64,000 nt of DNA from Mytilus edulis (Eukaryota), in contig NC_092351.1 of NCBI RefSeq assembly GCF_963676685.1, positions 64,604,001-64,668,000 on the forward strand, read 5' to 3'. The translations under genes were made by a program, and so were the position numbers. The notes beneath the pieces were generated by a model. It saw only the letters and a program-made list of their open reading frames with translations, did no database searches and had not been told where the DNA came from. Position 1 is the first letter of the stretch; each line of letters starts with the position of its first letter. Below, piece after piece: positions 1 to 51,243 of this stretch.

Positions 1-8
1 CAGACTCC
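1..8 (-). CDS. Gene A exon 19 (start of TM3 exon, GVC..), truncated by window
   Basis: tcatttttag|GGA GTC TG; phase 0 matches the preceding exon; supplies the conserved Cys at the top of TM3. Confidence 0.65.
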
Positions 9-3000
9 CTAAAAATGATAGAATACAAATTATTGTATTCTTTTATTTAATGTCGGTCATGTTTGGAACAGTAAATTTTTCAAGAACATATAGTTGTTTT
101 TTTCCAACTTGAATGTTCATAGCAATTGATTGAATACTTCAAAAAGTGTACACACTTTAATGACTTGCCTGCATTTTTAATTTTAAAAGTTGAAATGCGC
201 ATCTTCAAGACCTCTATCAGTTCTTTGTATTAAAACATGCTTAGACTAAAAACTAACACAGTTTCCATGAATACGATTAAATACGCTAAACACGAAAAAC
301 AATCAGGTTACACTAACGATAACGAAAGTAACTCCTCTAGTCCAAAAGACGGTGATGGATTCTTGTTAAGGATTTTTGAGGTTGATGTTGCAAATAGATA
401 TCGAATAACTTGATTATGTGTAAAACAAGTGAGCACCAATGTTCGGCTTTTATATGCTCAAAATGTATTAAGCTTTCTGCAGACTGAGTTGTAAGAAGTA
501 AACATCTACCGGCAACTTTAAGTTTAAAATTAGAGTTATCACCGGTTATACGATTTACGATTAATTTGCTGTAACTAATTAACTTACTTTATCTTCTGTT
601 CGTGTTATACCAGAAAGGAATATTGCATACGACAGAATTAAGGCCACACATAAGTTTATCAATATTTTTGATCGGTCATTTCTCAAGTTTTTCACATGCC
701 TACAAAAATAGCGAAAACATAGAAATTAGCAATTAACCATTGTCTGCATTACAAAAACCATAAACCAATAGGTAAGGGACAGTAGTCCTATCAACCTAGT
801 GGTGTTCGATATGATATTTTGTTCATTTCACAGTAACTGTTTCATATTTACAAAATACAACGAATCCATCTGAAATAACATTAGTTATGAAATAAAACAT
901 AATTAAGGAATCATTTGTTCCTAAGTTTACTGATGTAATATGTACGACAAAAACCGTTTCCATTTTACACTTTTTTTCTCCAAAATATTAGATTAAAGCA
1001 ATTGTATTAATGAATAATAGTACATAGTTTTGTAACTTCAATAAACTATATTAAAACGAGAATATATAATTATTTTATATAACATACACATTGAAATCGT
1101 ATTAACAAACATTACAACGTTTATTCAACTTTCAACTCAATTAGAAAACATATTAGCTTAACATGTTTATATTAGATCTTGTTGATTGATTGATGGTTTC
1201 TTAGCGTCAAGTTCCTCGATCGGTGTCATATTATTTATTGGGTCATAAACATGACAAATCTATGACCTTTTTTCCACGAATCTTTTACCTTTTTAATAAT
1301 CAGTTCATTGTACTTCGTGTTAACGACATAATTCGTCTTCCAATTATGCATTTTTGTGGTAAAACTTAAACATCTTAAGAGCCGAACGGTTAACATTGTT
1401 GAATAGGTTTGAGTCTCTTTTTTTAACTGTATGGTGCTTCCTTTTGCGATCTGATGATTCAAGCCCTTTCCAATTTATTTTTACAGTTTGTTTTATGCTG
1501 CGTTGTAACACAACTGTTCCACCAGGGAAGAGTTGGGCTCTATACATTATATTTGTATCTGACCAAATGTACGCAACATTACAAGATGTTTACTGTAAAA
1601 GAACAGATTTTATCAAACAAAGGAAAACATATATGTGTATGAAAGGTATTAAGAGGAATTCGTATTTAGTAAGCTGGACAAAAGACTACAGATTTAATGG
1701 TCATGACGTCATGAGACAAATATCTGAGAATTGAACACATGTTTGAGGCTATGCATAGATGTTACTCGATAATACACACCATTGGTTAATTCAGATTAAG
1801 CATTACTCTTAGCGGCATGGGTATATTCAAATTACCTACGTTATTTTAATTAAAACACTGAAACAACTCTTAACGATTTTTTTTTATAAAAGAGGGGCGA
1901 AAGATACCAGAGGAACATTCAAACTCATAGATCGAAAATAAACTAACAACGCCCTAACTAAAAATGATGAGGACAAACAGACAAATAATAGTACACAAAA
2001 CACAACATAGAAAACTAAAGAATAAGCACCCGTCGTGTTGCTCATTGATTCACAAACCCGTTATAACTTACCTCCAAAGTACAGAATAAATCAGAATTGT
2101 AACCAAAAGACACAAAATTGATATTCCGCATCCTATAGCTGATATAAGGCTCAGTGGAAAATGATGTATACTCGGCTAAAAAGAAAGTGAAAATGTTTCA
2201 TTACATGACATCAATGCTTCAACGTGAGTTACAATGAAAATAAGTTAAACATCAACTATCTGAATTGTTAATGTTTTGTCAATAAAGAAAAAGGGAATAT
2301 ACAACTCCCACTGGTTTAGATGGGAACGCATTTCATAAAAATTCCTTTCTTGTGTCATGATGTTTTCAACAGAAGCTATAATAGCAGAAGGGGCCTCCAT
2401 GGCCGATTGATCTAAGTAGTTGAAATACTGTATCATCTGATAACATGTCTGTCAAAACTGAGGTTGTAAGGTCAAATCCCGTGGCACTTGCATTCGTCTT
2501 CAATCTTAAGATTGGGATCATCTATTTTTCTACAACTAGTCGTTGGTTTTCTCAGTGCACTCCTATTCTGCATTCTACACCAATAAAAAAAGGATCAACA
2601 CGATATTGCACGATAACAATCAATTTATTCAGATATACATTTCTATCTTGTAAGTAGATAATAGTAGATGTGGTATGAGTGCCAATGAGACAACTCTCCA
2701 TCGGAGTCACATTATGTAAAAAGTAAAACATTATAGGTCAAAGAATGGCTTTCAACAAGACGCATTGGCTCACACCGACAATGTACCAGCAAGCTATAAA
2801 CGGCCCAACATAATTAGTGTAAAAAATCCCAAACTGGAAAACCAACGGTTCAAATATGTACAAGTGCTTAACTCATATTCTGTAGGATTATCATGACTTG
2901 GTTATGTGTTGTTATAGATTCCAATAGATATACGTACTGTCCTTCCTGGGCTCATTAGCATGGCGAAATTCGTAGTGTGATTATATTCACAGATTGTGTA

Positions 3001-6000
3001 AGAATCTGTTGACTCAACAACTCGTGACCCAAAGGACGACCACGCACCATTCGTAGTATTGCTAAAATATAGTTGATCCACATATAAAATCAGTGGTTTT
3101 CATTATACATTAAGAATAACATCTCTTATCAAACGAAAATTTTTATTTATATTTCAATGTTAATTGAAGTTTCATCAAATGGTAATATTCTTTAAATAGT
3201 TTTAAAAATATGTTTATAAAATGGATAGGGAATGGAATACAACCACCTTATACGTGACAAATACACAAGAATGATAGTCATGTAGAGGTCAGCGTATGAT
3301 ATCTCAGAGTCAAAATATCATTCATACAAAATTCCCAATCGTAGTCGTATGTTAATATATCTGCCAAATGCTGAGGTTTGTGTTAAATCTCATGAAAAGC
3401 AAAATCTGAGTATTTCTTTCAACACCGACAAATTGTTCGGTTTTTAGGCTTTTATCATGTATATATATATAACAATGAAGATGTTGTATGATTGACACTG
3501 AGACAGCTCTTCAAAAGAAACCAAATGATACAGAAATTAACAACAATAGGTCACCGTACGACCTTATATGCATTGGTTTAATACTTACGAAGCACCGAAA
3601 TCCCAAAATCCACAGAAAGGTGTCGAGTAGTCTCCCTTGAAAAAATACATTTGTCACGTTAAAACATGTCAGAATAATAATGATTGCTTTCAATAAACAT
3701 GTGCTATCGTTTTGTAAGGAGTTAAACTTTAAAAGATTTCATATTCACGTGATGAGATTTAAGTTAGAAAAAAAAAAATAACAAAAACATAGACAGTCTA
3801 ATGTTGCTTTAGTTAATTGACGCCTGGTTACTAAATAAGAAACAACAAATTGCTCAACCAATCTTATAAAAGTTTTGGAACACCTATACGAGGTAAGTAT
3901 CGTTTCCACTGACATCTTACATTTTTTACAAAAATGCTTAACAAACTGGGAGACACACTTTATTTATGTAAAGTTTTGCAATAGAGGTACATCCAATTTA
4001 AGGATTATGAGACATAAATATTTATAAAGCATATTGAAATACTATAACTTACTAACAGGTGTTCGAATTTAATATTTAAGGAATAATCCGAACAAGATGT
4101 TCCGTAAATCGTAAAATCAGCTATAATAGAATTAACATCATTACTTCCATTAAATGCACGTACGTCACTGTAAATAAAATTAATAAAATCATGTCAGCTC
4201 ATTATGTGAGTTTCGCAAAGCAATATGGTAGGTAGAAAAAAATGTAGTGATATAAAAACAACATTAAATAATCGACTAGAATAATGAAAATTGTAGATAG
4301 TTGTTCACGAATAACAATAAAACAGGTGATAACAATATAAACAATATCTCACAAAGACCTGGATGCGTGAACAGTTTTCTTTTTGTATCGGATAAGATAA
4401 ATGATAGCAGAATTATTGTGTTAAGGTGGTACCTAACACTACAGTGAGATAACTCTGTAATATCAGCTAAACGTTTTAATTACGTTGCGTTGTGAAGGCA
4501 ATATAAAGCTTCTCAATGATCAAAATTAGTGTTTGTCAAACTGCTATATAACCAGTGTAATTCTTCTGATAAAACGCTTGGTTCAAATTTTTTAATTTTT
4601 TATATAAATGTTCCTGTTGAGGTCAAATATATGCCGATGAGTACTCACCCATTTATTATTAAATACTTCGGGAAAAAACTTGAAATATTTCGATAGAATG
4701 TGCTACTATATCCCGTTAAACCTAAAAAAACAATTGCTGACATTTTCATATTTTGTCTGTTAGAGGTAACATAGTCATAGATATCAATGTAACAATATTA
4801 TCCATTCTAATTATTCGGTGTTAAAATATCAATTACAAACAATTTCATCACACTCTATTGTTATTATAATATCAATATCCATAGTTTTTGCTAGTCCTAA
4901 ACACAACAGGATATTTTTCAATGTTTACGGTCACAAATGCAACTGTATGCTGAAGGAAAGTTAATATCTATCGTTCAAACTACTACATGTACGTATTAGT
5001 GTTGCGTACTAACTTCAAAGTCGTGAATTCAAATTTCCGTTATTTCAAGAAATATTTTCATTGCGTGTTATATTGCTTTTTTCAAATTATAGTTGTGAAT
5101 TGATCTAGCTGGTTTGTTTATCTTCGGTTTAAACTTAAGTTTTTTCATATGTGTCGAATGAATTGTTATTGTATTCACGTTTTGTGTTTGCTTTTAATTT
5201 TATATGCATATATATTTAAATTTCAATGACAATATAAAGTATTAATATTTAAATTAAGATATATAGGTCAGATGCATTGATTACATCAATTATGATTAAA
5301 TCTATCTGTTTATATATTCCTTAATCCTGGATTTTGACTAAAATAATATTTGGATTAGAGCATATATAGTTATTTAGTTATTGCAGATTCGTATTAATTA
5401 TTTACCACTACAAATGTTCTTCTTAAGTTTAATTTCAGTCACTGAATCTGCTATCCAAGAGTCAGAAGTTTTTGAACGATCAGGAACAGATATCTCGTCC
5501 GAACCAGCCTTCCCTACTTGCATTACTGCAATAAGTTACATAAATAAACAATTACGCAGCATATATTGTCATTAAATAAAACATTCCTAAATGTTGTTGC
5601 TTTATGCGACTGCTGTGGATTAACACAAATATAAGATAGTTAAATTCGAGGACAATACAATTCTTGGAATATGATTGGTTTAATGCAACTGTGTTTAATT
5701 CGTGTATACTTCATATGGGGTAGTAGGCGTGGTATATTTAAATCAGGTTTATTATTTGAGATATTTATACGTCCATTTGTAAAAACAGCACAGTGTTAAG
5801 GAAAACTCTGAAAGGTTTCAACAGACGACGAAATTGGTGATGACCTGTTGAAATGAATTCATAAAAGTCATTAAAATTGAACAAGCCGTTATTGATGGTA
5901 TTTGTTTTTGTATAGACCAATGAAAGAGGGTTAGTAATATTGAAGATAACTACTTTGATGACTACGTGAATAAGAAATACAGTATGATCTTGTATGTACA

Positions 6001-9000
6001 TAAACAAGCGTAAATGACTTTCTTTGTTTTCCCCTCAAGCATGACATGGTATGTTTCAGTAAAGTATGTATTACTCTTAATCACAAAGAACATCGTTTAC
6101 ATCTACACACAAGCTCGGAAAGCATAACACATAATGTTTAATCAATTAACGTACCAACATTATCTTTTGTAACAATCAATGTGGCTTCAGTATTTATAAT
6201 TTGGTTTACTTGATTAGTGTACTCTGTTACTGTGTTCACGAGTGAAGTTACACCATTTGATCCCTGATGAAAAAAAATCTTAATTATATATTGGGAATAT
6301 CAGATTAATGATTGCTTCATATTTATATCATTGTCCATGATGCCGAAAAAGCCTACATTTGCATATAAGTTATCACTTGTTATTATTGTTAAGATATCAT
6401 GTAAAACGCTCTTGATTTTGGCTCTGTAAATATTACTTAAGATGATTTATACAAGGTTCAATATTTAAACTTTGCTTTGAGCATTCTTAAACATACATAC
6501 AGCAAGTCTTTCTGGCCAATACCTACATAGAGTGTTATATTAATTCATAACAGTCGATTACACAAAGAAAAAAAATATTTCCGATGTCAGATTATTTTTT
6601 ACCAACAATAAACTAACGATGTTATTTTGAAAAGTCAGAATCATGGGATTTGAAATCGTACATTACTTGAATGCATTTAATACTGTGACAAATATTCACT
6701 AACACTATCCAATTTTGAAATATAACACAATAGATAGTTTTAAAAGTCAATTTGTTTACCAATATAAAATGCAATAGGTATATTACATGTATAAATGCAT
6801 ATATATACTATATTTGAAAATAATAACCTTGTCGTTAAGTTCTTTCCATGACTCATGATTTCTTTCGTCGAGTAAATTATTGCACAAAGAACCAAAAATC
6901 TGAAATACATACTTTCAATCACTTACCAATGATTTCAAATTATATCAATACAGAATGCGAAACATGTAGAATTAGAAAAAATCAGTTTTACAAAGATATT
7001 CAAAGCATAACTGACTTTGTAAATATGTGTTGTATTCCATGTTGTAAACAGAAGATTTTGTTCCTTTTAAAAGTAATAGATATTGTTATTTCTCCTTCGT
7101 TTCATTCCTTCGTAGAAAAAATGAACACAGTATAAGATTGTGCTTTCGCTACAAAATTACGTTTAATTTTACATGTTGAGCATAAATATATAGTCAACAA
7201 AAGAAACGATACAAAACTTTTTTTCAAATTAAAGATAAAGTTTTCCGTTCATTGGACCAATATTGAAGGAAGTAATACTTAATCATTATGGAAATATAAA
7301 TCCGTTTAAAAAAAAATATTTGTTCGCTTTTGTGACGTTTTTTCGCGATTTTTGTTTTTTACAAAATTTACATGAAACGACAATTTTAAAAACAGAAGTT
7401 CCAACTAATGATGCCAACCTCTAATTTAAAGGTAAAGACAGTGTTTGCCATCAATTTGTTTTTAAAAATCATACAGTTTCTTCGTTTATTAGTTAAGCAA
7501 AGTTCGGCCCCACGAGAAATCCTTAAAATGTATACATTATCAACTGATTTACCATAGACAGTATGTGTAAAGTGATATTCAAAAAGCGGTAACAATCTTA
7601 AAACTAATCCGAAAGGTTCCAAATTTACTGTGTATTGTTTTCATATCTAAAGCATTGATTTTAGACTAAAATTAAAAAATTTTTTTTGCACTTTTTTAAA
7701 ATTTCAAAAAACACTTTTTTCCCAAAATTTAAAAAAAAACCAATATTTCAACCCATTAGTTACAACATGAACATAACTTGATTAGCATATTGAATAGTTT
7801 TAAACAAATTTGAAATTTTATTTAGTACTTAGAAAATTATGGGTCGATTTTTTGTTCAACTTTCCGCAAAACTAATCTACAACCTATGACCGTTTACACG
7901 GAATTTAGATACTTTCCGAAAAGTTTTGATTTTCATTATCACATGTGCATACATTGCAAATCAAAGCTTTTTAAAATAGTGTATATCATTTTGTTTTATA
8001 TGTAACACTTTTTGATAAATTTTATTTCAAAGTCGTGTATCGTTTCTTTTGTTGACTAGTATATATACGGTCAGCCATACATGAATGCATCAAAATTCAC
8101 AATACACGAATCAGTAAGGGGCGATAAAGTTACAAATAAAATTGTGAAATGAATGGGAGAGAGGGAACTAGTAACCAAACTAATCTAGTCCTTTATATGT
8201 GGTAACGAATGTCGCATTGGTGAAACACGCCTTAAATGTTCCTTCACCGGCCGTGTAAAAAGAAATCTAATGGATATTACACTTTCGCATTTAAATGTAG
8301 AAAGACCGTTATATAAAACATAGGACCGTTAGGAAATGTAGTTAGCAGTATCTGTTTTCGTATCTAATGTAAATCCCTGTCGGTCAACTAGATTTGAACG
8401 ATTTCCAAACAAACTATGTTATAGCGTTTCTGATGAACGCAAATTATATTTTTTGGCATACAAGTTAGATGCCATACCTTAAATATTAAGAAACATATTC
8501 TATTTGTTCAAATAAACTATATTATAAAATTAACAAGAAGTTTATATATATTTTTTTTAAAACGATACAATACACCTGTGATTAGAAATTTGCTGTAACA
8601 TAGGCGGAAATAAAACTTTGATGAAGAACAATAAAACTGTTTTCATGTTTATATATACACGTTATAAACATGTATAAATACAACCACGGATTTTGTTGGG
8701 ATTTGTCTTAATCAGTCTTAAAAGTGTATGTTGTGCTTTGTATACTGTTATCGGTTATTTTTATTATTTGTATTTATTTGCCATGGCGTTGCCCTCTTAC
8801 TTTCCCGTTCTTTAAATGTTCGTTTCGTTTGTTTTTTTTTGCTCTTCTTAAACATCGTACATCATAACTGACTAAAGCAAAACGAACAGCTAATAGTTAG
8901 TCTTAAACAATTCAGAGTAGTTTCGATTCATTGTATTTGTAACATAGTGTATGGAGTCAAGATATGCTTACAAACAGAATTTGTAATGAAGTGTTTTGTT

Positions 9001-36000: not shown

Positions 36001-39000
36001 TTTGTACATGCCCATGCTCAATCATGACCGTGAATTTCTTGATTTGGCGTTAATGAGTTATGTCACCCGTGTGCATTTTATACATTACAAAATCGCTAAT
36101 GCTTTGTCTTTTTGTTTAAAAATTTGAGTAATAACTTATTCACATCAACAAGGTAATTATGTTATGACACGAAAGATTACATGATATTTTTATTTGATGC
36201 GGAAACAAATTAATAATGAAAAAAAATTTGCAGGAATAAAACTCAATAAATAAGGAATCACTTTAGTAGTTGTTCTTGTGGCATTAACATGTCGATTCAG
36301 CACTTAAATAACAACTTCAATGAACATTTCAATGTTAATTTCATAACCTGTGATCATGTTTCTTACCGTCCTCACTTACTGATATGATCACATATTATAT
36401 GTGTTTCGTGCCAACTGATCAATAACTGGGTTTCCAATATAGTGCGAGTGATTATTTTACCTCATACTCATCATTGTTTTAAATGACATCTAAAACTGTC
36501 AAAAAAGCCTCCGAAGAAGGCAGTACACAAAAGAAAACTTGAATAGTCGGTTATGTTATGATTAAAAACAATCACATACGTTCTAATGAAACAAAACTGT
36601 GACGATGAAATCTACCAGTAACTGAAATCAAAGTGTGAGTACTTAGTCTTCCAATAAAACATGATAATTTTGAGATACGAAGCAATTGTCTTTCCTCATT
36701 AATCCATTAAGATACAATCCATTGTAAAAAAAATATATATGAAATATTTTTAAAACTTTGCAATATTTTAAACAATATAGTTCTTTACTTTATTGATAAT
36801 TACAAAAGGAGAATATGTATTTTAACACAATAAGAGGTTATATCAAATATGCATGACATTAAATATCATTTTCACATTGCCATGACAATGAACAATGGAC
36901 ATCAATATAGCAAAATTATAAAATTCACTACTCACCGAAATCCTTTTGCTATAATTGTCTGGTGGTATGTAATGTGTACAGGTATTTCGACAACTGAATT
37001 TATTTCGTGCAAATTTTCAAAAACTGGTTTAATACTACAAGATTCAGTTGAATTATGCACTGTCACATTTATTAGAAACTGGATTGGAATGCTGCTTAAT
37101 GCATTAAGTGCCTGTTCTGTAGCAAAGTCTTCAATTTGTAGAGCAACGGCGTACATACCAGTCGTTCCAGTTGCGTTGTAAGTAAGAATACACTTTTCCT
37201 TAAAAAAATAAAAAAATAAAAAAGTCATATTTGCTGTATCAAAAATACAACAATTCAAGATCGCACGCCTTAACATATTTTTGTTTTTATTATTTATATT
37301 TGATACGGGAGACAAAATGAAAATCCTTAAATACTACTCTTCATTTTCATTTTCATACTCATTTAAGTACAAATAAAGAATTCAAAGAAGTATTATTTTA
37401 AAGTTAAACAAGCGCATATGTTTTATTTACGAATGATGAGTACGCCTTTTTTATAAAAAATGTTGTAAAAAGAAATTCTAGAAAAAAAAGCCCATCTCAA
37501 ACAAGTTAAAGGGAATGTTGTCCGCTCTCTTATGTATAACGTTTACATCCTCGGACTTCAAATATTTTGCTTTGAACGTTCCTGATACAGGTAAATCAAG
37601 AAAAGCGTTTCGGACGCATAAAATCGATAAACGTGTTGTTTTCATTTTTTTTTTATTTCAATGGGTCGATACCTCCAGTACTTCGGTACTGGCATGATTT
37701 ATAACAAACCTTTCTAAATATGTCCGTTTATAAATATTGAAATTGTTAAGACACTAAGGTTTCAACTCTCTCAGGCAAAATTAACCTTAGATGTAATTCG
37801 ATATTTTAAGGTATTTTTTTTATCATATAGATCTTCAACTGTTTCGGTACTTGAACATACTCGGCTTTCAAATATTCTGCTTTTGTCGTTATTGATGCAT
37901 ACAATTATTAAACGTTCTGTTTTCAATTTTTCACATCAAAGACGGGAGAGTAACAAATACAGTAAGTTTAAACTACAATTCATTAAATCAAGTCGGCTAT
38001 AAATTTTGCTTGACAATTGAATAGATCACCGACTTGTAATTATTCAGATCAAAAAAGTTATCAAGCAAAACAAGAACAAAGTTAGAAACTTTATTTTACG
38101 GAATGATTTAAAAAAGTGTAATCGCTGAGTATTGATATTTTGCTTGAAGAAAGTGTTACCAAAACGTTTATCTTATTCAATACTGAATCACTACTTAAGC
38201 TTTTTAAGTTTACCTTATTCAATACTGAATAACTGAGCTTTTTACATACGCTGTCACATTCATGATACGTGAGTGCCCATCGACATCGTATTACATCACC
38301 ATCTTCGTCTTGAACTAAAACATTGATTAAATTGATATGAAATAATATCTGGTGTTTTTCTCGCAAATTGATAGACTGATATTGTCCTAAAAAATTTCAG
38401 TACATATTTTTATAACGGCAATTGGAATTATCTCCCTTATATTATTGACTTATTAAACACCAACTTAGTCACTTTATAGTCTTTATATTTTTCATTTTTC
38501 ACAGTTTAAGATTAAATATTTTAATACATTTGGTTGATATTGTCCTAATAATGGAATGTGAATATACTAATAATTATCCTGCAATTTGGTGTCGTATTAT
38601 ACAAATACAGCCCTATAAATATCGCTATACTGTATCTGTTTACTATACAGATATCACTTTAAAGCTCCACCCACTGCCGAACACATTTGTGTATTGCTAA
38701 TAACGAGTGTCGTATGAACCTTCGTGACCTCAGAATGTGTATTGCAGTCGCATTTTAATGACGTATTGTTTGAACTTATGCTAACTAACGATTACTTTTA
38801 TACATTGTTTGTTTTTTAACATTTTTTTAAAAACCAATTAGAATTAAACCAATTTTTTTTATTACAGACGAACATGAACAGCAGTATTTTCTACGACGAC
38901 AATTATCCATTTAAAACTTGAATGTGTACATTTTTCACAAAAACAATCATGTCGATTTCGGCATGTATGTTAAGTGAATGTCAAGTTCATTTCTAAACTA

Positions 39001-42000
39001 AGAATGCAGGACAACTGGTACACCTTTGTTTCGAATTGGAGAATGATTTCTTATTTGTTTAACTGTTGATATTAGCTGTTATGTTGAAATTGATAATTAT
39101 TCACCGTAAGCGATGTATTATTATTGACAATTTGAGATCATTTCTTTGTGAACCCGTCTGAATGCGTGATTTTAATATAACTACGCGAGCCTCAAGGTAT
39201 TTTGAATTGTCTTTCCAAGCACAAACAATATACAGAATTAATTTCAGAATAAAGACAATCACTGTTTATGTAATATTACAGAATCCGGATACATTTGATA
39301 CACAGTGTGCAAATGTCCTCACCCAATATGAATTTTATTTACCCGATAAAGTCTTATATTAAGGCAATTGCACACTGTGTAACTAATAAAATCGTCATAT
39401 CTCGTTTTTATTATGTAAGGGAGTAAACATAGAAATAAGAAATAACTTCAGGACCATTGTCAAAGCTTGTAAACATTCTGTCTTTTAATCTAACAATAAT
39501 GTATTTGATCTTAAATGTACCAATAGTTTGAGTATAAAAGTGTGTTTCTAATCAAACCGTGCATTTGGTTCAAATCAATACTTGACATTGAAAGCATAAA
39601 ACGATGTTAAAAAGGTAAAAACCCGGTTATAGTAGAAATCTAGTCACTCGGTTTTTCAGTTTTTTAAATATTATGTTTTGAAGTCAGTCGTTACTTTCGT
39701 CTACTTTTGATTTCTGTTCGACACCATTGAATAAGAATTATGCAAGATTTCCTACCAACAAAGCGGGCGTTACATGATGAACAGGATATTCCGAACCTTC
39801 TGATACAACTAATGTAAATTTATTTTCAATTGGTGACGTTGGTGCTGCTCAGTCCTCATGTTTCTATATGGTGTTATGCATACAAATGTGTTTTGGTAGT
39901 CTTTTCATTTTTTACCAGAACTTTTGTCAGTAATTCATTGACTAATACTAGTTTTAACATCGCTTTGGTATCCTGAGCAAAGGTTTATATTATAAAATAA
40001 TTTTTATGGATTTTGTGAATGACCACATATACTTATCAATTGATTATTAGCAATAAATATCAACACGATTGATTTCTAAATTTGCAAAGCTCAATAATAC
40101 CTGGAAGTGACAAAGAGTAAAAACATCCATATTCTAATCGAATAACTGGTGGAATATTGCTTATTGGTGGGGAATTAACTTTAGCAATATCTTCACGTAT
40201 GGTTAAATTTGCAGTCGAAAGCAAAGACCAGGCTAGCCCACCTTCTTCAAGGTTTATCCAGTTGTATCCTTCGTACCTAGTAATGTTAAGACAATATCGT
40301 AATACAGTTACATTATATACAAATTGTTTAAATGATAAAAATAATATAGACGTCATCATAACCATAGTTATGTTGTCACAGATAAGCTAAACACCAGTGT
40401 TGGTGTATTTCAAAGTATTTTAAAACCACACATAGAAATTGAGTCTATACAAGAAAACATCTCTCATACATTTGTAAGTATTCCTTGCATTACTTGTATC
40501 TTTTAAAACTTATTTCGCATACAATTATCATTGTTTCGTGCACTGTACAATACATGTTTTTATTGTAAATTAGCATAGTCATCCCGTTCTTGAAAAATGT
40601 TCTTTTCTCTCGTCGTATTGTTGATTCATTAACAAATATATAGTATGGGCTTTGCTCATTGTTGAAGGCCGTACGGTGACCTATAGTTGTTAATGTATGT
40701 GTCATTCTGTTCTCTTGTGGAGAGTTGACTCATTGGAAATCATAATACATCTTTTTTTACATGTATTTCAAACATACATGTAGTCAGTTGTTACTTCTAC
40801 ATTTGAAATGTCTTTACCAAGTCAGAAATATGACAGTTATTGTCCTTTCGTTTGAAGTGTTTTATCATTAGATTTTGCCATTTGATTACAGACTTTCTCT
40901 TTTTGAATTTTTCTCGGGTTTCAGTATGCTCATTTGCGGCACGATATAATTGAATGAAATTCGTCCAAAGGAAATTGATAAATACGATATTAATGTGTGT
41001 TTTTCTTTTCAAAAAATCAAACACATGAAAAGTTCTTGATTAAGTATAGGTATGTCCTTATGTAAAACCTGATTGATTTAGATTTATTTTAAAGCCAACA
41101 TGTGTATGACAGTCGCAATTAGTTCAATTATATTCATTACAATGTGTGAGCAAAACGAACTGACATAAAAGGTACACTAGTTACATTTTGCATTAATCTC
41201 AATCACTGTAATAACAAACAATTGTGTCAAGCAAGAAATACAAATTGACAAATGATGTGTGATTTCGTATATTTTTTATTTTCGTTTCTGTGTAAATATG
41301 CGCGTATTTAGAATTTGCTTACCGAAATTGGTATATGTTGTCCAATACTTTTGGGAGAGTAACATTTAATGTTCTCTGACCATATATCCACCCTTCTTCT
41401 TCACTAAATGCAATACAGTAGAAGGACATCAAAGGAACTAACTTTAACCAGCATCCTCTGTAGCAATCTAAAGTGCCTTCTCCCTCGACCAAATCTCCGC
41501 TGTCATACTCATTGCAAAAAAGGTTCGATGTATCTCCACGAAACGATAGTTTATATGTGATGTCAATTTGCTGGAATGAAAAAAATATTAGAAAAAAAAA
41601 AAAAAAAAAAGGAACAACTGCTAAACGTAAAATGCATTTATGACGTTATCCTTTCTCACATTGCAGTCATAGAAAATACTTGGAGAAATCTGAAAATTTT
41701 TTGGACGATCCGTTTTGCCTCTTTTAACAAATTTCTAACTGGACTGAATTGTATACAGTTTCAGTAATGACCAATTGAAATTTTAAACCGAACATTAATG
41801 CTAATTCTTCTCAATTTCTCAATAATTAGAAAACACGAAAACATCACCACTGTACTTTTTCAAGATTCTTCTCATATATTATTAACTGGTTCAAATACAA
41901 CATTGCAAAGAAAGTTTCAATTCTGTTTTAATACACGACCTATTGGTATTAAAAACCGATATGGCAGCAAAACAAAACTTATATTAAGCATCACTTGCTT

Positions 42001-42936
42001 TGATTACAAAACTAACTTGCATTAAAGTAAAAGAACAGACAAACGATCACTAAAAATAACTATAATCCATACATTCTAACCACAAAAAGTAAAAAAGAAA
42101 CCCAAAAATATTGAACAAAAAAGGTAAAGTGAAAAATAAACGATGAAAACCAAACAGAAAAAAACGAATACACTGACAGAGTTTAATCAGATCCACTGGT
42201 AAAACAAACCAAAACCCATACTGTTCTTTAAGTGCCATACATCACATCCAAATGCTGTTAGACTGATACCACTGAAGGTACCATAAACCCAGCAGTCAGT
42301 GTTTAACTCTTTTGATTAAGGTGGTACCCAACACTTTCACTAAAATTAATTTGGCTCGTTTAATTTTCATAAAATGTTGTCAAAGTATTTACTTTGAGAC
42401 TTTATTAAAAATATAAAAAAATTTTTTTTTTTGAACCAACCGTTTTGTCAGAAAAAATACACTGGTTATATAGCAATTTGACAAACAGAAATTTTGATCA
42501 TTGAGAAGCTTAATATTCTTTTTACAACACAACGTAATTAAAACAGTTAGCTGACTTTACAGAGTTATCTCCCTGATGTATAAGGTACCACCTTAAGACA
42601 GAAATTATTGAAAAATAAACTTGCCACCCTCACCTTGCGACGTTGACCTTCAATAAAAAAAAATCCATTTAGGTCCTTGTTAGTCAAACAAACTATAACC
42701 GAGAAAACACATCATCTTTGAAAGGGCATCAGCAGACCACCAGAATAACTTGAACTCAAAAAAAGCAAACGCCAAAATGCATTTGGTACTGGACATTTTT
42801 AGAAAAATAAATATAATTTTGACCGTACCTGATTATCTATGTGCCTCCATGTAATTGTACCTCCTCGAAAATGGGATCCATAAATACACACAATGTTAAC
42901 TATAATCAACACCGCATTCACAGTGTTGACACACAT
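1..42936 (-). CDS. Gene A: adhesion GPCR (signal peptide + SHFRGG/cadherin-Ig-like module + HormR + GAIN/GPS + 7TM), 3'-partial
   Basis: Exons: 42829-42936, 41323-41570, 40101-40276, 38214-38314, 36936-37198, 33740-33901, 32937-32977, 15178-15374, 9446-9634, 6828-6899, 6155-6263, 5406-5525, 4649-4721, 4053-4167, 3589-3635, 2938-3061, 2072-2175, 588-699, 1-8. All introns are GT-AG, and the phases join into one open frame (2361 nt through TM2). HormR Cys/Trp pattern, GPS 'CGFWDF..WSSFG..TICEYNHTTNFAMLM', secretin-class TM1 and TM2. Confidence 0.9.
588..699 (-). CDS. Gene A exon 18 (ICL1-TM2)
   Basis: HVKNLRNDRSKILINLCVALILSYAIFLSGITRTEDK; tag|..|gtaagt; phase 2-0. Confidence 0.92.
2072..2175 (-). 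CDS. Gene A exon 17 (TM1)
   Basis: PSIHHFPLSLISAIGCGISILCLLVTILIYSVLWR; ttttag|..|gtaagt; phase 0-2. Confidence 0.93.
2388..2615 (+). mobile_element. Degenerate tRNA-derived SINE (V-domain-like)
   Basis: A-box-like TGGCCGATTGA, B-box-like GGTCAAATCC, and central 'ggttttctcagtgcactcc' resembling the V-SINE core. Confidence 0.5.
2938..3061 (-). CDS. Gene A exon 16 (GPS, cleavage site and Stachel)
   Basis: NTTNGAWSSFGSRVVESTDSYTICEYNHTTNFAMLMSPGRT; phase 2-0. Confidence 0.93.
3589..3635 (-). CDS. Gene A exon 15 (GPS start)
   Basis: GDYSTPFCGFWDFGAS; caag|..|gtaagt; phase 0-2. Confidence 0.9.
4053..4167 (-). CDS. Gene A exon 14 (GAIN)
   Basis: DVRAFNGSNDVNSIIADFTIYGTSCSDYSLNIKFEHLL (VNS.I and F.H GAIN motifs); phase 2-0. 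Confidence 0.9.
4649..4721 (-). CDS. Gene A exon 13 (GAIN)
   Basis: GLTGYSSTFYRNISSFFPKYLIING; ttttag|..|gtgagt; phase 1-2. Confidence 0.88.
5406..5525 (-). CDS. Gene A exon 12 (GAIN)
   Basis: VMQVGKAGSDEISVPDRSKTSDSWIADSVTEIKLKKNICS; phase 1-1. Confidence 0.88.
6155..6263 (-). CDS. Gene A exon 11 (GAIN)
   Basis: GSNGVTSLVNTVTEYTNQVNQIINTEATLIVTKDNV; phase 0-1. Confidence 0.88.
6828..6899 (-). CDS. Gene A exon 10 (GAIN)
   Basis: IFGSLCNNLLDERNHESWKELNDK (NLL..N..W..L GAIN-A motif); phase 0-0. Confidence 0.9.
7191..8058. mobile_element. ~870-bp non-autonomous TIR element (Tc1/mariner-like)
   Basis: TIR TAGTCAACAAAAGAAACGATAC(A) at both ends, in TA context. Confidence 0.8.
9115..9305. mobile_element. 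191-bp MITE with TA TSD; related partial copy at about 56641-56815
   Basis: ta|CTGTGGATTCATT..AATGAATCCACAG|ta. Confidence 0.85.
9446..9634 (-). CDS. Gene A exon 9 (GAIN-A helices)
   Basis: LDKLFSGNSDDEFVSTILEELDNITRNNYELRSGDLLTASAILNDIA..QLD (L.SGDL motif); phase 0-0. Confidence 0.92.
10093..10136 (-). ncRNA. Degenerate minimal type I hammerhead ribozyme within a dispersed repeat (about 10060-10360)
   Basis: ca-CCGAUGG-gucu(uaugu)agac-GAAA-c(gcga)g-UC-uggcgu; stems II and III intact; two mutations in the CUGAUGA core. Confidence 0.65.
13348..13440. repeat. Short palindromic repeat built of GACCGTACGCGTACGGTC units
   Basis: Perfect 18-bp palindrome at 13354-13371 and a partial second unit at 13396-13410. 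Confidence 0.7.
15178..15374 (-). CDS. Gene A exon 8 (HormR domain)
   Basis: NANLCGANIDRFNTKWSLTQENKQMTLSCTGEHVGYVSRNCSSGGIWDEPDYSRCISKSMLYIQEQ; phase 1-0. Confidence 0.92.
16031..16435 (+). repeat. Dispersed family 'AAGATGTGGTATGATTGCCAATGAGACAACT'
   Basis: Other copies or fragments at about 2665-2852, 3477-3563, 11545-11840(-), 34895-35020, 40643-40760(-), 60778-61084, 61780-62052(-). Confidence 0.85.
16965..17607 (+). repeat. Left arm of ~640-bp inverted repeat (partner 30280-30919)
   Basis: CACTAGTAACCCGAATTT..GGTCCATTGCAAT is near-identical to the reverse complement of 30280-30919. Confidence 0.95.
17608..18370 (+). mobile_element. Decayed 3' end of a LINE ORF2 (CR1/L2/Crack-type), interrupted by a MITE
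   Basis: Translates FEFAEYLDLL..FRTGNHRLPIATGR*..RQERYCVLCDSQE / ..FHYILNC, with stops and frameshifts. Confidence 0.75.
17780..18044. mobile_element. 265-bp MITE with imperfect TIRs and AGAT duplication
   Basis: agat|GGAATAGGATCCCAGTT..AATTGGGTCCCCGTTCC|agat; removing it restores the LINE codons caa gag ata gg. Confidence 0.7.
19908..23684 (-). CDS. LINE ORF2: AP endonuclease + reverse transcriptase + RNase H + CCHC finger
   Basis: WNCQG, LQET, GDFNAH, SDH (APE); YRPIAL, DFQKAFD, GTPQG, FADD (RT); FTDGSK, DSLSAL, WIPSHVG..GNESAD (RNase H); CINC..ESVEHYMLNC. Likely ATG (MAAHF) at 23684; the open frame extends to 23828. Confidence 0.96.
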   Translation of the reverse strand: MAAHFTVLHWNCQGLKAHAPEFLWHLGSVKHRPDIICLQETFCSNESDFIDIQGYMLAAFSTRGTKRGGTAIYCKNGINFTKVSLISKLEISAINIIYNKKRLLIVNIYDPQSDTVQTDYDTLINQFDTEFILCGDFNAHHNLWGSERIDTKGRELANSILYNNICLLNEGLGTRLNPTNLKTSCIDLSFCSLNLAHRIQWSVDQNSTFNSDHFSISLKIDIKVINSEENNSFKWNFKKADWKNFSKACNERISDNYISDNIENSNTRLTTELIDIATQFIPIKKFRNKTKPCVPWWSDQCTKAIKERNKARNKARHTGKGHDFIIYKEKNKISQKVLQDTQDIYWKNYCNTLNDNSNISDLWYNIKKMLGKISSKKEIPALRACGHFLTNTIDKANYFAKKFVEVSSSNNYDNEFKKHKSTVEEQEINTFLKYYKENQDCFNEKFTLQEFKDAISDTNDSSPGKDKTSYIMFRHLSDKTLNIFLLFLNKIWFLQEIPKDWKHSVVIPCLKQGKDSSDPLSYRPIALTSNFNKIMEKMVNNRLRWFLEKNNLYNPNQSGFRKNKNTLQQCIRLDNEIHKTFAKKYITVGVFIDFQKAFDMLWKHGLLKKMVNFGIKGNLLAYVNNYLTSRTLQVKINNTFSETYFVENGTPQGSCISPTLFNIMVNDLSTCLQNCEISQFADDGAIWKSGSCIKFLQKKIQLDLDNICKWCSTWGFKISPSKTVAMIFTRRNNINISLQLGNHTLEIVKEIKFLGLIFDRNLTWHNHIQNLQTKCLKVINCMRVLTGTRWGATSNTLRTIYISLIRSKLDYGCEIYNSASFSNKKCLDKIQNQALRICTGSMRSASLKALQVEMGDPPLEIRRQSLIAKAFLNMTSFDNLHPAKAAVNDTFIFDYYSKNVKRKPFSITARDFLAQNNFSTECIYNYSECPCPPWHIEKSLVKTQLHDKISKKDLPHLIKSEAEILIDSEYSKHLQIFTDGSKDPHGNTSCAYVVPELKIKKGFKLPNYISIFMSELMAIFVSLLWLEDFRPIKTVIFVDSLSALQAIRAPIFKVKNQILYDIHLILNSLKKGGSEIIFEWIPSHVGVMGNESADLQAKNALNLDNCIDIIPLFKEDIKTVCKNFLKNSWQQDWETNKDRSLFKIIDKVNFQIIIPKLTREKEVLLFKLRTGYIGLNKHLNKIGVVTSNLCINCNQIESVEHYMLNCKLFNLERKILFEKLKKSNVTDFSLKNLLKGYNFAPIYEYVLSTKRLHYVNNT
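23773..25038 (-). CDS. LINE ORF1: gag-like nucleic-acid-binding protein with three zinc knuckles
   Basis: CFKCQGYGHMQNEC, CVRCGGAHTTPNC, CINCNGEHPASNKDC; ATG (MDDSQ) at 25038. Confidence 0.93.
   Translation of the reverse strand: MDDSQHFTGTGYEVDPLEEYVHNLQDTHVDTPHKNFDSISVRSGTDSEVSTSEYEAAHDWQTQRHKKRKINISPGLKTYSESVQSTIKKAPTRRRLEVKKTVSKAKKFFAVVTCVDTEIKLGLKNPILIQKLFNKTVGIIKTLNKTKTGNLFVECFDVNQFNELKKLNKLGEWEIRVNIPKIMSTSVGCIYRTPSDISIDQVKEALEAYNVIKVEEMFFYDKVKKQKVRSATLKLYFNTPELPERVNLGFTSYKVKIFVKKPIQCFKCQGYGHMQNECSNKEICVRCGGAHTTPNCDKPPKCINCNGEHPASNKDCPKRIENIKIITKVAKEKCSYKEARTEVKHEIKKQDIVHRPKTKSPLPKEHTEIEDLLVFIALLLKKLPAIKEENAQFIYITDLVKKVFGFEIQPQNLTKRFTELI
25262..25530 (+). repeat. Two tandem ~132-bp units
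   Basis: ATATTGTGTATTGA..GAACGCGGACCTCGATGAGAACACCTGGATTGAAAGTTTGC.. starts at 25262 and 25394. Confidence 0.9.
26130..30084. mobile_element. Non-autonomous TIR DNA transposon, Academ-like
   Basis: ata|TAGTCCGGCCGATCGGTG..CACCAATCGGCAGGACTA|ata: TAG..CTA termini, 3-bp TSD, about 150 bp of imperfect TIR with repeated AAGATGGC/AAAATGGCGGC motifs. Confidence 0.72.
26771..29640 (+). pseudogene. Decayed Gypsy/Ty3 gag-protease fragment
   Basis: Broken gag-like ORFs with an RS/SP-rich end; retropepsin motif SMIVDTAAMITLV (D at 28948) and 'DDVILRLVIL'; many stops; no RT or integrase seen. Confidence 0.72.
30280..30919 (-). repeat. Right arm of ~640-bp inverted repeat (partner 16965-17607)
   Basis: ATTGCAATGGACC..TTCGGGTTACTAGTG. 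Confidence 0.95.
30920..31064 (+). repeat. Near-identical direct copy of 15761-15904
   Basis: TATTATTGCCAATGATATCAACAGAACTATAAATG..GGCTATACTGTTATATATTTT occurs at both sites. Confidence 0.9.
32937..32977 (-). CDS. Gene A exon 7 (41-nt end of module)
   Basis: QASNQICITLQVK; paralog of 53620-53660 with the same length; phase 2-1. Confidence 0.88.
33740..33901 (-). CDS. Gene A exon 6 (Ig/cadherin-like)
   Basis: ISEINVTSPKEMIKSELLSYGIAIDRWYVNVTWTPDEKDIGNHAVCFTAFDSM; 162 nt, as in paralog 55469-55630. Confidence 0.9.
33953..34200 (+). repeat. Dispersed family 'AAAAGTAAAATCACA.AAATACTGAACTCCGAG'
   Basis: Other copies at about 44052-44333(-), 57566-57755, 40797-40930(-), 45440-45690(-), 58617-58960. 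Confidence 0.8.
34443..34600 (+). repeat. Dispersed family 'AAGAGGGACGAAAGATACC'
   Basis: Other copies at about 1889-2062, 48168-48320, 16760-16900(-), and 60640-61197(-), the last split by the previous family. Confidence 0.85.
36936..37198 (-). CDS. Gene A exon 5
   Basis: EKCILTYNATGTTGMYAVALQIEDF..LSSIPIQFLINV..QTIIAKGF; phase 0-2. Confidence 0.92.
38214..38314 (-). CDS. Gene A exon 4
   Basis: VQDEDGDVIRCRWALTYHECDSVCKKLSYSVLNK (DxDGD); phase 1-0. Confidence 0.9.
40101..40276 (-). CDS. Gene A exon 3
   Basis: YEGYNWINLEEGGLAWSLLSTANLTIREDIAKVNSPPISNIPPVIRLEYGCFYSLSLP; phase 2-1. Confidence 0.9.
41323..41570 (-). CDS. Gene A exon 2
   Basis: QIDITYKLSFRGDTSNLFCNEYDSGDLVEGEGTLDCYRGCWLKLVPLMSFYCIAFSEEEGWIYGQRTLNVTLPKVLDNIYQF; phase 0-2. 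Confidence 0.9.
42320..42592. mobile_element. Kolobok-like MITE with TTAA TSD; other copies at about 4421-4615 (partial) and 51719-52005 (diverged)
   Basis: ttaa|GGTGGTACC..GGTACCACC|ttaa. Confidence 0.82.
42829..42936 (-). CDS. Gene A first coding exon (signal peptide + SHFRGGTITW)
   Basis: MCVNTVNAVLIIVNIVCIYGSHFRGGTITWRHIDNQ|gtacgg; hydrophobic leader ending IYG|SH. Confidence 0.85.
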
Positions 42937-48622: not shown

Positions 48623-48777
48623 TCACATATACAGATGATCGTGTGTATCAATGGAGCCTCCCGGGCCTTTGATAAATGAAACTAAACTTTTAGTCAGCAC
48701 TCCAGTCATTATTACAGATAAAACCAACCCAGCTGATATGAAAACAACACTGAGTACATAGCTTGTATTGTCAGCTT
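48623..48777 (-). CDS. Gene B terminal exon (TM + cytoplasmic tail)
   Basis: tattatag|EADNTSYVLSVVFISAGLVLSVIMTGVLTKSLVSFIKGPGGSIDTHDHLYM*; phase 1; AATAAA about 24 nt after the stop (48594-48599). Confidence 0.78.

Positions 48778-51211: not shown

Positions 51212-51243
<32 letters not shown>

What the first reader, a model, noticed from the sequence alone, without database searches (positions are those of the whole stretch)
1..42936. Adhesion GPCR whose ectodomain is a SHFRGG / cadherin-Ig-like module rather than a textbook adhesion domain
Seen: exons 1-7 encode about 366 aa (signal peptide, SHFRGGTITW, Cys-rich region, NSPP, DEDGD, CRWA, YAVALQIED, WYVNVTWTP). They splice in frame across a 17.6-kb intron onto HormR-GAIN-GPS-7TM. 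Established: characterised aGPCR N-termini use EGF, cadherin, lectin, olfactomedin, TSP1, Ig, LRR, pentraxin, CUB or SEA domains. Inference: this module resembles the N-terminus of Dictyostelium Sib ('integrin beta-like') proteins and their invertebrate relatives, and NxxP/DxDGD suggests Ca-binding cadherin-like folds. I know of no described aGPCR subfamily with this architecture. The ORF track misses most of these exons.
Basis: partly seen in the sequence, partly recalled or inferred. Interest (0 to 1): 0.85.

Follow-up and report, generated by a model that had tools for sequence, protein, structure and literature searches.

The report
Mussel adhesion GPCR with Sib-type ectodomain
This is a real, intact mussel (Mytilus) adhesion G-protein-coupled receptor gene whose outer tip is a three-domain 'Sib-type' module (Sib-like, cadherin-like and Ig-like beta-sandwiches); the design is unusual for this receptor class, but it already sits unremarked in public mussel protein predictions.

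Summary
Eight minus-strand exons (42936 to 15178) have AG/GT borders, no stops and chaining phases. E1-E7 total 1,099 nt (366 codons). They join a Pfam-positive HormR exon across a 17,562-nt intron, of which 13,955 nt is one inverted-repeat-bounded insertion carrying a LINE. GAIN, GPS (H-T|T, TNFAMLM) and TM1-2 follow in the window; TM3-7 lie just left of it.

The E6-E7-HormR join is nearly residue-identical in predicted proteins of four Mytilus species from several annotation pipelines, including a RefSeq model of a paralog 90 kb away in this genome. The genome has at least 18 module loci. Five of them sit directly upstream of HormR-GPS.

AlphaFold2 models of natural homologues (pLDDT 89-92) give three beta-sandwiches:
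- D1 is related to Pfam SIBA-E_N.
- D2 is cadherin-like (Z 7-8.9).
- D3 is Ig-like (Z up to 9.6).

In other animals the same module caps EGF, ZP, SRCR, Sushi and other proteins. The receptor fusion was seen only in Mytilus.

The novelty is overstated, because databases already hold this architecture as 'ADGRB-like', though I found no paper describing it. It is a new variant of a known kind, of moderate interest.

The parts
42829..42936 (-). E1: start codon, signal peptide and the SHFRGG start of the mature protein (phase 0 out).
   Evidence: It aligns to residues 1-36 of P0158 at 78% identity. The HFRGG motif follows the signal peptide in 48 of 48 relatives.
41323..41570 (-). E2: most of domain 1 (SIBA-E_N-like, with conserved cysteines).
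   Evidence: It is 64% identical to P0158 residues 36-119. It is homologous to the upstream paralog exon at 63311-63060 with E 3e-19, and that paralog's product P0200 hits PF24907 at residues 31-143.
40101..40276 (-). E3: end of domain 1, the NSPP linker and the start of domain 2.
   Evidence: There are 19 paralogous exons in the genome. N and P of NxSP are invariant in alignment A2.
38214..38314 (-). E4: the DEDGD / CRWA part of domain 2.
   Evidence: D-x-D-x-D, C-R-W, E-C and C are invariant or nearly so in 55 relatives.
36936..37198 (-). E5: the YAVALQIEDF core of cadherin-like domain 2.
   Evidence: A profile of this exon finds 584 proteins. Domain 2 of the homologue model matches cadherin EC domains at Z 7-8.9.
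33740..33901 (-). E6: Ig-like domain 3 (WYVNVTWTP).
   Evidence: Domain 3 of the P0016 model matches Ig domains at Z up to 9.6.
32937..32977 (-). E7: a 41-nt micro-exon encoding the last strand of domain 3 (S-x-Q-x-C), ending in phase 1.
   Evidence: The same micro-exon occurs in paralogs, in one case only about 400 bp upstream of its HormR exon. Its peptide matches P0158 except at the last residue.
15375..32936 (-). The 17,562-nt intron between the module and HormR.
   Evidence: 13,955 nt of it is one insertion (see the next part).
16965..30919 (.). An insertion bounded by inverted repeats (361 nt at 98% and 200 nt at 95%). It carries a LINE with open ORF1 (25071-23776) and ORF2 (23840-19911).
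   Evidence: One search shows the inverted repeats. One search shows RVT_1 at 6e-37, Exo_endo_phos and zf-CCHC.
15178..15374 (-). E8: the hormone-receptor (HormR) domain exon. It enters in phase 1 and its open frame opens only one base upstream of it, so it has no upstream start of its own.
   Evidence: Pfam HRM at 6.9e-7. A stop lies directly upstream in frame. It is 73% identical to P0158 residues 364-433.
3591..9637 (-). GAIN-domain exons, given as approximate HSP ranges: 9637-9443, 6905-6828, 6266-6156, 5529-5404, 4773-4648, 4166-4029 and 3635-3591.
   Evidence: They are collinear with P0158 residues 429-670 at 60-100% identity. Pfam GAIN covers P0158 residues 444-611. No single exon reaches Pfam GAIN on its own.
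2938..3060 (-). The GPS exon: C-E-Y-N-H-T|T-N-F-A-M-L-M, holding the predicted cleavage site and tethered agonist.
   Evidence: Pfam GPS at 2.7e-9. It is 95% identical to P0158 and conserved in 15 of 16 paralogs.
2071..2175 (-). TM1 exon.
   Evidence: Hits 7tm_2 profile positions 4-29 at E 0.002.
582..725 (-). TM2 exon. TM3-TM7 and the tail continue left of the window (L018 9999-1115).
   Evidence: Hits 7tm_2 profile positions 22-63 at 8e-6. The L018 exons hit profile positions 79-113, 147-171 and 205-246. One search gives the collinear HSPs.

Best explanation
The window holds the 5' four-fifths of one intact gene of about 52 kb, on the minus strand of Mytilus edulis chromosome-scale contig C8. 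It encodes an adhesion GPCR of about 1,030 residues.

The predicted protein runs as follows:
- a signal peptide;
- a three-domain N-terminal cap, made of D1 (a divergent SIBA-E_N beta-sandwich starting with S-H-F-R-G-G), D2 (cadherin-like, with NxSP, DxDGD, CRW and IEDF) and D3 (Ig-like);
- HormR;
- GAIN with a GPS reading H-T|T and the tethered agonist TNFAMLM;
- a latrophilin-like 7TM.

Shown:
- the exon structure;
- the domain identities;
- the recurrence of the same order at five loci in this genome;
- the same join in predicted proteins of four Mytilus species.

Inferred:
- The fusion arose by phase-1 exon shuffling. The module's last exon ends in phase 1, and it joins EGF exons in the neighbouring gene but the HormR exon here.
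- The cap is the ligand- or surface-binding tip.
- Pulling on the cap is passed through HormR-GAIN, exposes the TNFAMLM agonist and switches on G-protein signalling, as in other adhesion GPCRs.
- The 17.6-kb intron is long only because a 14-kb mobile element landed in an intron of about 3.6 kb.
For: - Splice sites, phases and open frames hold for all eight exons.
- Pfam hits HRM and GPS on single exons and 7tm_2 on five TM exons in the right order.
- The locus is collinear from residue 1 to 1032 with P0158, the M. galloprovincialis RefSeq 'ADGRB1-like' protein, at 64-95% identity per exon.
- The E6-E7-HormR junction has the same residues in P0158, P0152/P0012, P0157, P0160, P0161, P0163 and P0005. 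These come from four species and several annotation pipelines.
- P0160 is the RefSeq model of the paralog at C8:64.73 Mb in this same assembly.
- The module exons lie directly upstream of HormR and GPS, on the same strand, at five loci on two chromosomes.
- In one paralog the E7-like micro-exon lies about 400 bp upstream of HormR.
- The HormR exon cannot start a protein. It enters in phase 1, and the stop that opens its frame sits directly upstream.
- All invariant residues of the 55-sequence family alignment are kept in the window's exons.
- The AlphaFold2 models have pLDDT 91.6 and 88.9, and the fold matches are.
- By sequence, the 7TM and GAIN of P0158 are closest to ADGRL3 (3.6e-50) and its HormR-GAIN region also matches BAI3. 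No solved chain covers residues 1-367.
Against: - There is no transcript evidence for this locus.
- No full-length or module-only product of this exact locus turned up among annotated M. edulis proteins of 199-1772 aa. The neighbouring gene's product P0200 did turn up. So RefSeq may have missed, split or demoted this gene.
- A 14-kb insertion with an intact same-strand LINE sits in the critical intron. It could impair splicing.
- Predicted proteins from other species are gene models, not cDNAs.
- Exon-wise Pfam does not reach SIBA-E_N or GAIN for this gene itself.
- One of the two canonical GPS disulfides is missing (C to S and C to Y), so cleavage is not assured.
Confidence: 0.8

Rival explanations
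1. There are two genes. E1-E7 make a secreted module-only protein, and an independent HormR-GAIN-7TM receptor starts from an unseen first exon. On this reading the in-frame join is a relic of family history and is not used at this locus.
For: - A module-only isoform exists for a relative: P0016, 362 aa, M. galloprovincialis isoform X3, ending right after the E7-type strand.
- Read-through of the E7 donor gives a stop after three codons.
- The gap is 17.6 kb and holds a 14-kb mobile element.
- No fused product of this locus was found among annotated M. edulis proteins.
Against: - The HormR exon enters in phase 1. A stop sits directly upstream in its frame and it has no start codon or signal peptide of its own.
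- No other coding exon similar to any relative was found inside the intron.
- The same join is modelled in four species and for the paralog 90 kb away in this assembly.
- Without the insertion the intron is about 3.6 kb, in the range of the paralogs, which run from 0.4 to about 12 kb.
Confidence: 0.1
2. This is a recently disabled copy. The gene is one of many tandem paralogs, and the 14-kb insertion in the module-HormR intron has silenced or truncated it. The exons still look intact only because the event is young.
For: - The inverted repeats are 98% alike and the LINE ORFs are open, so the insertion is young.
- The LINE lies on the same strand as the gene, so it could end transcripts early.
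- The locus product is absent from the annotated proteins found.
- The family is large, so a single copy may be dispensable.
Against: - All coding exons found (8 defined by splice sites, about 15 more as HSPs) are open and keep every family-invariant residue.
- Introns with large mobile elements are common in this 1.37-Gb genome and usually splice.
- E5 is held word-for-word by runs labelled as three of the four coded organisms, and at a 0.77 share by the fourth.
Confidence: 0.08

Closest known systems
[quoted passage not shown]
   Same: They have the same architecture, from signal peptide through D1-D2-D3, HormR, GAIN/GPS and 7tm_2. The exon order is the same and the module-to-HormR junction is nearly identical.
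   Different: None is the product of this locus. The best match, P0158, is 64-95% identical per exon, so it is a paralog or a diverged allele group. The BAI-type names are automatic and misleading, because these proteins have no TSP1 repeats.
Latrophilins (ADGRL) and BAI (ADGRB), the vertebrate HormR-GAIN-7TM adhesion GPCRs
   Same: They share the HormR-GAIN-GPS-7TM core. The tethered agonist TNFAMLM is almost the latrophilin one. For the homologue P0158 the best solved-structure sequence match is ADGRL3 at 3.6e-50, and its HormR-GAIN region matches BAI3 at 5e-16.
   Different: The distal ectodomain lacks the lectin and olfactomedin domains of ADGRL and the TSP1 repeats of ADGRB. The GPS has H-T|T instead of H-L|T and lacks one disulfide.
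CELSR/Flamingo (ADGRC), the cadherin-bearing adhesion GPCRs
   Same: This is an adhesion GPCR with a cadherin-fold domain distal to HormR-GAIN. CELSR1 EC domains are among the structural matches of D2 at Z 7.1-7.2.
   Different: There is no Pfam Cadherin hit. There is a single cadherin-like domain flanked by two other beta-sandwiches, not nine EC repeats. There are no EGF or laminin-G domains.
Dictyostelium Sib proteins (SibA-E, 'integrin beta-like'), via Pfam PF24907 SIBA-E_N
   Same: D1 of the family is related to the Sib N-terminal domain. Homologues hit the profile over positions 3-117 of 119, starting right after the signal peptide.
   Different: There is no VWA domain and no Sib-type membrane anchor or tail. 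For the receptor-type proteins themselves the hit stays under E 0.01. I could not align a Sib sequence directly.
Invertebrate 'integrin beta-like protein A/B/C' and module+EGF/ZP/SRCR/Sushi proteins, including the neighbouring gene product P0200
   Same: They carry the same three-domain cap, always at the extreme N-terminus. The last module exon ends in the same phase 1.
   Different: The cap is followed by EGF, ZP, SRCR, Sushi, CARDB, RHS or TSP1 parts instead of HormR-GAIN-7TM.

Membership tests
Adhesion GPCR (class B2) | Secretin-type seven-transmembrane domain (Pfam 7tm_2). | tested here: met
   Five TM exons hit profile positions 4-29, 22-63, 79-113, 147-171 and 205-246, at E 0.002 to 2e-6. 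TM3-7 lie outside the window in L018.
Adhesion GPCR (class B2) | GPS motif with H-x-S/T at the cleavage site, followed by a tethered-agonist strand. | tested here: met
   Pfam GPS hits at 2.7e-9. The sequence reads N-H-T|T-N-F-A-M-L-M. One of the two usual disulfides is absent.
Adhesion GPCR (class B2) | GAIN domain upstream of the GPS. | tested here: inconclusive
   No single exon reaches Pfam GAIN. The exons are collinear at 60-100% identity with P0158 residues 429-670, where Pfam GAIN scores 3.5e-13. The joined translation was not searched.
Adhesion GPCR (class B2) | Actual autoproteolysis and agonist-dependent signalling. | not testable with these tools
   This needs expression and a cleavage or signalling assay.
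ADGRB / BAI (the name RefSeq gives the relatives) | Thrombospondin type-1 repeats distal to HormR. | tested here: not met
   There is no TSP_1 hit in P0152, P0155 or P0158, nor in any window exon.
ADGRL / latrophilin | Rhamnose-binding lectin and olfactomedin domains. | tested here: not met
   Pfam finds only HRM, GAIN, GPS and 7tm_2 in P0152 and P0158.
ADGRC / CELSR | Tandem Pfam Cadherin repeats plus EGF and laminin-G domains. | tested here: not met
   No Cadherin, EGF or Laminin_G hits. The resemblance of D2 is at fold level only.
Pfam PF24907 SIBA-E_N | A score at or above the curated cut-off of 28.1 bits. | tested here: inconclusive
   This gene's exons give no hit. The receptor-type homologues stay under E 0.01. 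Clear homologues reach it or approach it: P0003 39.0 bits, P0111 29.3, P0201 27.6, and P0200 (the window's neighbour) 21.6.
Dictyostelium Sib adhesion proteins | VWA domain, a single C-terminal membrane anchor and a short talin-binding tail (from my own knowledge of the family). | tested here: not met
   No VWA hit in any receptor-type relative. The membrane part is a 7TM.
Cadherin superfamily | Calcium-binding linker motifs and a Pfam Cadherin match. | tested here: not met
   There is no Pfam Cadherin hit. D2 shares the fold at Z 7-8.9 and rmsd 1.6-2.9 over 86-101 residues. Whether NxSP, DxDGD and ED bind calcium was not tested.

The most novel reading that the evidence does not exclude
A mytilid-specific adhesion-GPCR subfamily was made by phase-1 exon shuffling of an ancient module that is always N-terminal, the 'HFRGG cap' shared with Dictyostelium Sib proteins. 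Its free N-terminus (S/T-H-F-R-G-G directly after signal-peptide cleavage) is part of a binding or metal site. The receptors and the neighbouring secreted or EGF-anchored cap proteins recognise each other or a common target. That would give mussels a rapidly diversifying cell-surface recognition system wired to G-protein signalling.
Probability: 0.12. Interest if true: 0.65.

Novelty: new variant of a known kind. Interest (0 to 1): 0.4.

Why it matters
Adhesion GPCRs are defined by what their outer tips bind. This one adds a tip type absent from the characterised families I know of: a cap shared with amoebal Sib adhesion proteins and with many invertebrate matrix-type proteins.

It is also a clean case of domain shuffling at a phase-1 intron. 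The same terminal micro-exon joins EGF repeats in one gene and HormR-GAIN-7TM in the next gene 6 kb away.

The receptor core (H-x-T site, near-latrophilin agonist strand) looks fully competent, so the family offers a tractable way to ask what the otherwise unstudied cap binds.

It is not a new kind of system. Invertebrate adhesion GPCRs are known for novel tips, and the models already sit in public databases under misleading 'BAI-like' names.

Tried and rejected
- **Short fragments.** Searching the E8 exon for short Logan-derived fragments that might span the junction gave one genomic fragment only.
- **Exon-wise Pfam.** Pfam on the single module exons gave nothing. PF24907 searched over the whole genome did not find the locus.
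- **Literature.** The motif search for 'HFRGG' gave only unrelated papers. Four searches for the architecture in molluscs gave no description.
- **Solved structures.** A profile search of the Protein Data Bank with the family alignment gave no hit.
- **ESM Atlas.** The search with D1 returned only rotifer hypothetical proteins.
- **Tree.** A tree of HormR plus GPS exons from 16 paralogs was too weakly supported to say whether the module was gained once.
- **Domain 1.** Its fold class beyond 'beta-sandwich' is open.
- **Joined model.** Exons were searched singly by reference, and natural full-length homologues stood in for the spliced product.
- **Rejected idea.** I considered that the upstream module copy in the window (63311-55468) forms a second module of the same protein. 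It is instead a separate annotated gene, P0200, which ends at 48626.

Full report
**What is in the sequence.**

The window is AT-rich animal DNA (GC about 0.30). It is G000:C8:64604001-64668000 of a 1.37-Gb assembly. The contig length (90,587,198) equals that recorded for Mytilus edulis RefSeq proteins. One of those proteins, P0200, is 95-100% identical to exons in the window. The genome is therefore M. edulis.

I then checked them arithmetically.
- The exons are E1 42936-42829, E2 41570-41323, E3 40276-40101, E4 38314-38214, E5 37198-36936, E6 33901-33740, E7 32977-32937 and E8 15374-15178.
- All acceptors end in AG and all donors begin with GT. No exon has an internal stop.
- The phases chain, and the split codons read R, V, R, S and N.
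- E1-E7 total 1,099 nt (366 codons plus one base). The E7-E8 intron is 17,562 nt.

**The receptor part.**

- E8 hits Pfam HRM at 6.9e-7, and the frame at 3099-2905 hits GPS at 2.7e-9.
- TM1 and TM2 are in the window. The other TM exons and the C-terminal tail lie within 9 kb to the left (L018).
- Five TM exons hit 7tm_2 in the right order along the profile.
- The GPS reads C-E-Y-N-H-T|T-N-F-A-M-L-M. This fits the canonical H-x-S/T site (PMC13062082, abstract as listed; paper not opened) and is followed by a near-latrophilin agonist strand.
- By my comparison with the canonical GPS pattern, recalled from memory, one of the two usual GPS disulfides is missing in the paralogs examined.
- For the homologue P0158, the closest solved 7TM/GAIN by sequence is ADGRL3 (3.6e-50), and its HormR-GAIN region matches BAI3. 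Nothing solved covers the first 367 residues.

**Is it one gene?**

I could get no reads. The case rests on five lines of indirect evidence.

1. The HormR exon enters in phase 1. A stop sits directly upstream in its frame and it has no start codon or signal peptide. It therefore needs upstream coding exons.
2. The whole locus is collinear, residue 1 to 1032, with P0158, a 1,033-aa M. galloprovincialis RefSeq protein. Identity per exon is 64-95%.
3. The junction itself is conserved.
   - P0158 reads ...S-Q-A-S-N-Q-I-C-I-T-L-Q-V-I-N-A-N-L-C..., and the window gives the same string with K for I.
   - The same E6-E7-HormR join appears in models from M. californianus, M. coruscus, M. galloprovincialis and M. 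edulis, which come from several pipelines.
   - P0160 is the RefSeq model of the paralog at C8:64.73 Mb in this very assembly.
4. The module exons occur at 18 or more loci in the genome.
   - At five of them, on two chromosomes, the module lies directly upstream of HormR and GPS exons on the same strand.
   - In one paralog the E7-type micro-exon is about 400 bp from its HormR exon.
5. 13,955 nt of the long intron is a single insertion.
   - It is bounded by inverted repeats of 361 nt (98%) and 200 nt (95%).
   - It carries a LINE with open endonuclease-RT and zinc-knuckle ORFs.
   - Without the insertion the intron is about 3.6 kb.

Two points count against one gene. No product of this exact locus appeared among annotated M. 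edulis proteins of 199-1,772 aa, although the neighbour's product did. The insertion might also disturb splicing.

**What the module is.**

A profile of E5 and five paralogous exons found 584 proteins in 1.84 billion representatives. Pfam scans of the long ones show the matched stretch near residues 190-310, followed by very different C-terminal parts:
- HRM-GAIN-GPS-7tm_2, in Mytilus only (9 of 55 scanned);
- EGF repeats;
- EGF plus ZP;
- SRCR plus ZP;
- Sushi;
- CARDB, RHS and TSP1.

Carriers include oysters, Mercenaria, Pinctada, a crinoid, a sea cucumber, amphioxus and bdelloid rotifers.

Pfam PF24907 (SIBA-E_N, named after Dictyostelium Sib proteins) hits the first about 115 residues after the signal peptide. 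P0003 scores 39 bits and P0111 29.3 bits, both above the 28.1-bit cut-off. P0201 scores 27.6 bits. P0200, the window's neighbour, scores 21.6 bits (E 2.2e-4). NCBI calls several relatives 'integrin beta-like protein A/B/C'. For the receptor-type proteins themselves the link is only transitive.

I did not search or fold the joined translation of the window's exons. Instead I folded two natural relatives with 55-57-row family alignments.
- P0016 (362 aa, the whole cap) gave pLDDT 91.6 and pTM 0.88.
- P0080 (330 aa, D1-D2) gave pLDDT 88.9.
- Both models are all-beta.

Foldseek puts multi-domain protocadherin and Ig ectodomains first, at E about 1e-6 and low TM-score because of domain angles.

Exhaustive structural alignment resolves two of the three domains.
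- D3 (residues 264-362) is Ig-like. The best match has Z 9.6, rmsd 2.8 over 90 residues.
- D2 (about 162-273 in P0080) matches cadherin EC and cadherin-like domains in about 40 of 50 rows. These include cadherin-23, protocadherin-15, CELSR1, dystroglycan and SraP, at Z 7-8.9 and rmsd 1.6-2.9 over 86-101 residues.
- These Z values are modest. It is the consistency of the family that persuades.
- D1 was not tested alone.

The family-invariant residues are N and P of NxSP, D-x-D-x-D, C-R-W, E-C, the E-D-F of IEDF, and several cysteines and tryptophans. All of them are kept in the window's exons. Whether they bind calcium is untested.

**How it probably arose and works.**

The cap's last exon (E7 type) ends in phase 1. 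In the neighbouring gene (window 63311-48626, the separate RefSeq gene product P0200) the same micro-exon at 53653-53624 joins EGF exons. Here it joins HormR. That is the signature of phase-1 exon shuffling. This step is an inference.

A tree of HormR plus GPS exons from 16 paralogs could not say whether the cap was gained once. The five 'cap-less' paralogs I checked have no cap exons within 10-20 kb upstream.

Functionally, I infer the standard adhesion-GPCR mechanism. The cap binds a surface or matrix partner, force on it is passed through HormR-GAIN, the TNFAMLM strand is exposed, and the 7TM signals. The partner is unknown.

One paper lists an 'ADGRB1' transcript among the most induced in M. 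galloprovincialis gills after Vibrio exposure (PMC7772429). I cannot tie that transcript to this family.

**Verdict.**

The novelty is overstated, because the architecture already sits in RefSeq and UniProt for four Mytilus species under automatic 'ADGRB-like' names, although none of five searches of the held paper library (open-access PMC and bioRxiv) turned up a description. I rate it a new variant of a known kind, of moderate interest.

The earlier scan note on the inverted-repeat-bounded segment (s1-837393) was checked and holds.

Noticed in passing
window 48626-63311, minus strand: A separate gene lies upstream on the same strand. It has the same three-domain cap followed by EGF repeats. 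It is 95-100% identical to M. edulis RefSeq 'uncharacterized protein' P0200 (552 aa). Its E7-type micro-exon at 53653-53624 joins EGF exons in phase 1.
   Followed up: yes
window 16965-30919: A 13,955-bp insertion is bounded by inverted repeats (361 nt at 98%, 200 nt at 95%). It carries a same-strand LINE with open ORF1 (zinc knuckle, 25071-23776) and ORF2 (endonuclease plus RT, 23840-19911). The insertion looks young.
   Followed up: partly
48 family proteins (P ids); window 42860-42880: The x-H-F-(R/Q)-G-G motif sits at residues 4-42, directly after the signal peptide, in 48 of 48 relatives from molluscs, rotifers, echinoderms and others. The cap is nearly always at the extreme N-terminus; P0003, which has a second internal match, is the one exception seen. 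The reason for this positional constraint is unexplained. It may reflect a role for the free N-terminus or for the histidine.
   Followed up: partly
G000:C1:73714973-73715125 (L046): The cap-bearing paralog on contig C1 has S-Q-T-G where the others have N-H-T-T at the GPS. It lacks the catalytic His and Thr and is probably not self-cleaved.
   Followed up: no
window 2938-3060 and 15 paralogous GPS exons: By my comparison with the canonical GPS pattern (recalled from memory), 15 of the 16 M. edulis HormR-GAIN-7TM paralogs examined lack one of the two canonical GPS disulfides (G-S for G-C, and C-x-Y for C-x-C). They keep H-T|T-N-F-A-(I/M/V)-L-M almost unchanged.
   Followed up: no
G000:C8:64767339-64772245 (L023, L024, L039, L040): One cap-bearing paralog has three tandem HormR exons. 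They are mirrored in the M. galloprovincialis partial proteins P0005 and P0156.
   Followed up: partly
G000: C3 2.86-4.04 Mb, C8 55.2-55.3 Mb, C7 34.08, C5 37.34, C14 14.41, C10 34.7-35.5 Mb: At least 20 further HormR-GPS paralogs exist. The five loci I checked have no cap exons within 10-20 kb upstream, so this receptor core carries several different tips in M. edulis.
   Followed up: partly
I worked beside them afterwards.
   Followed up: no
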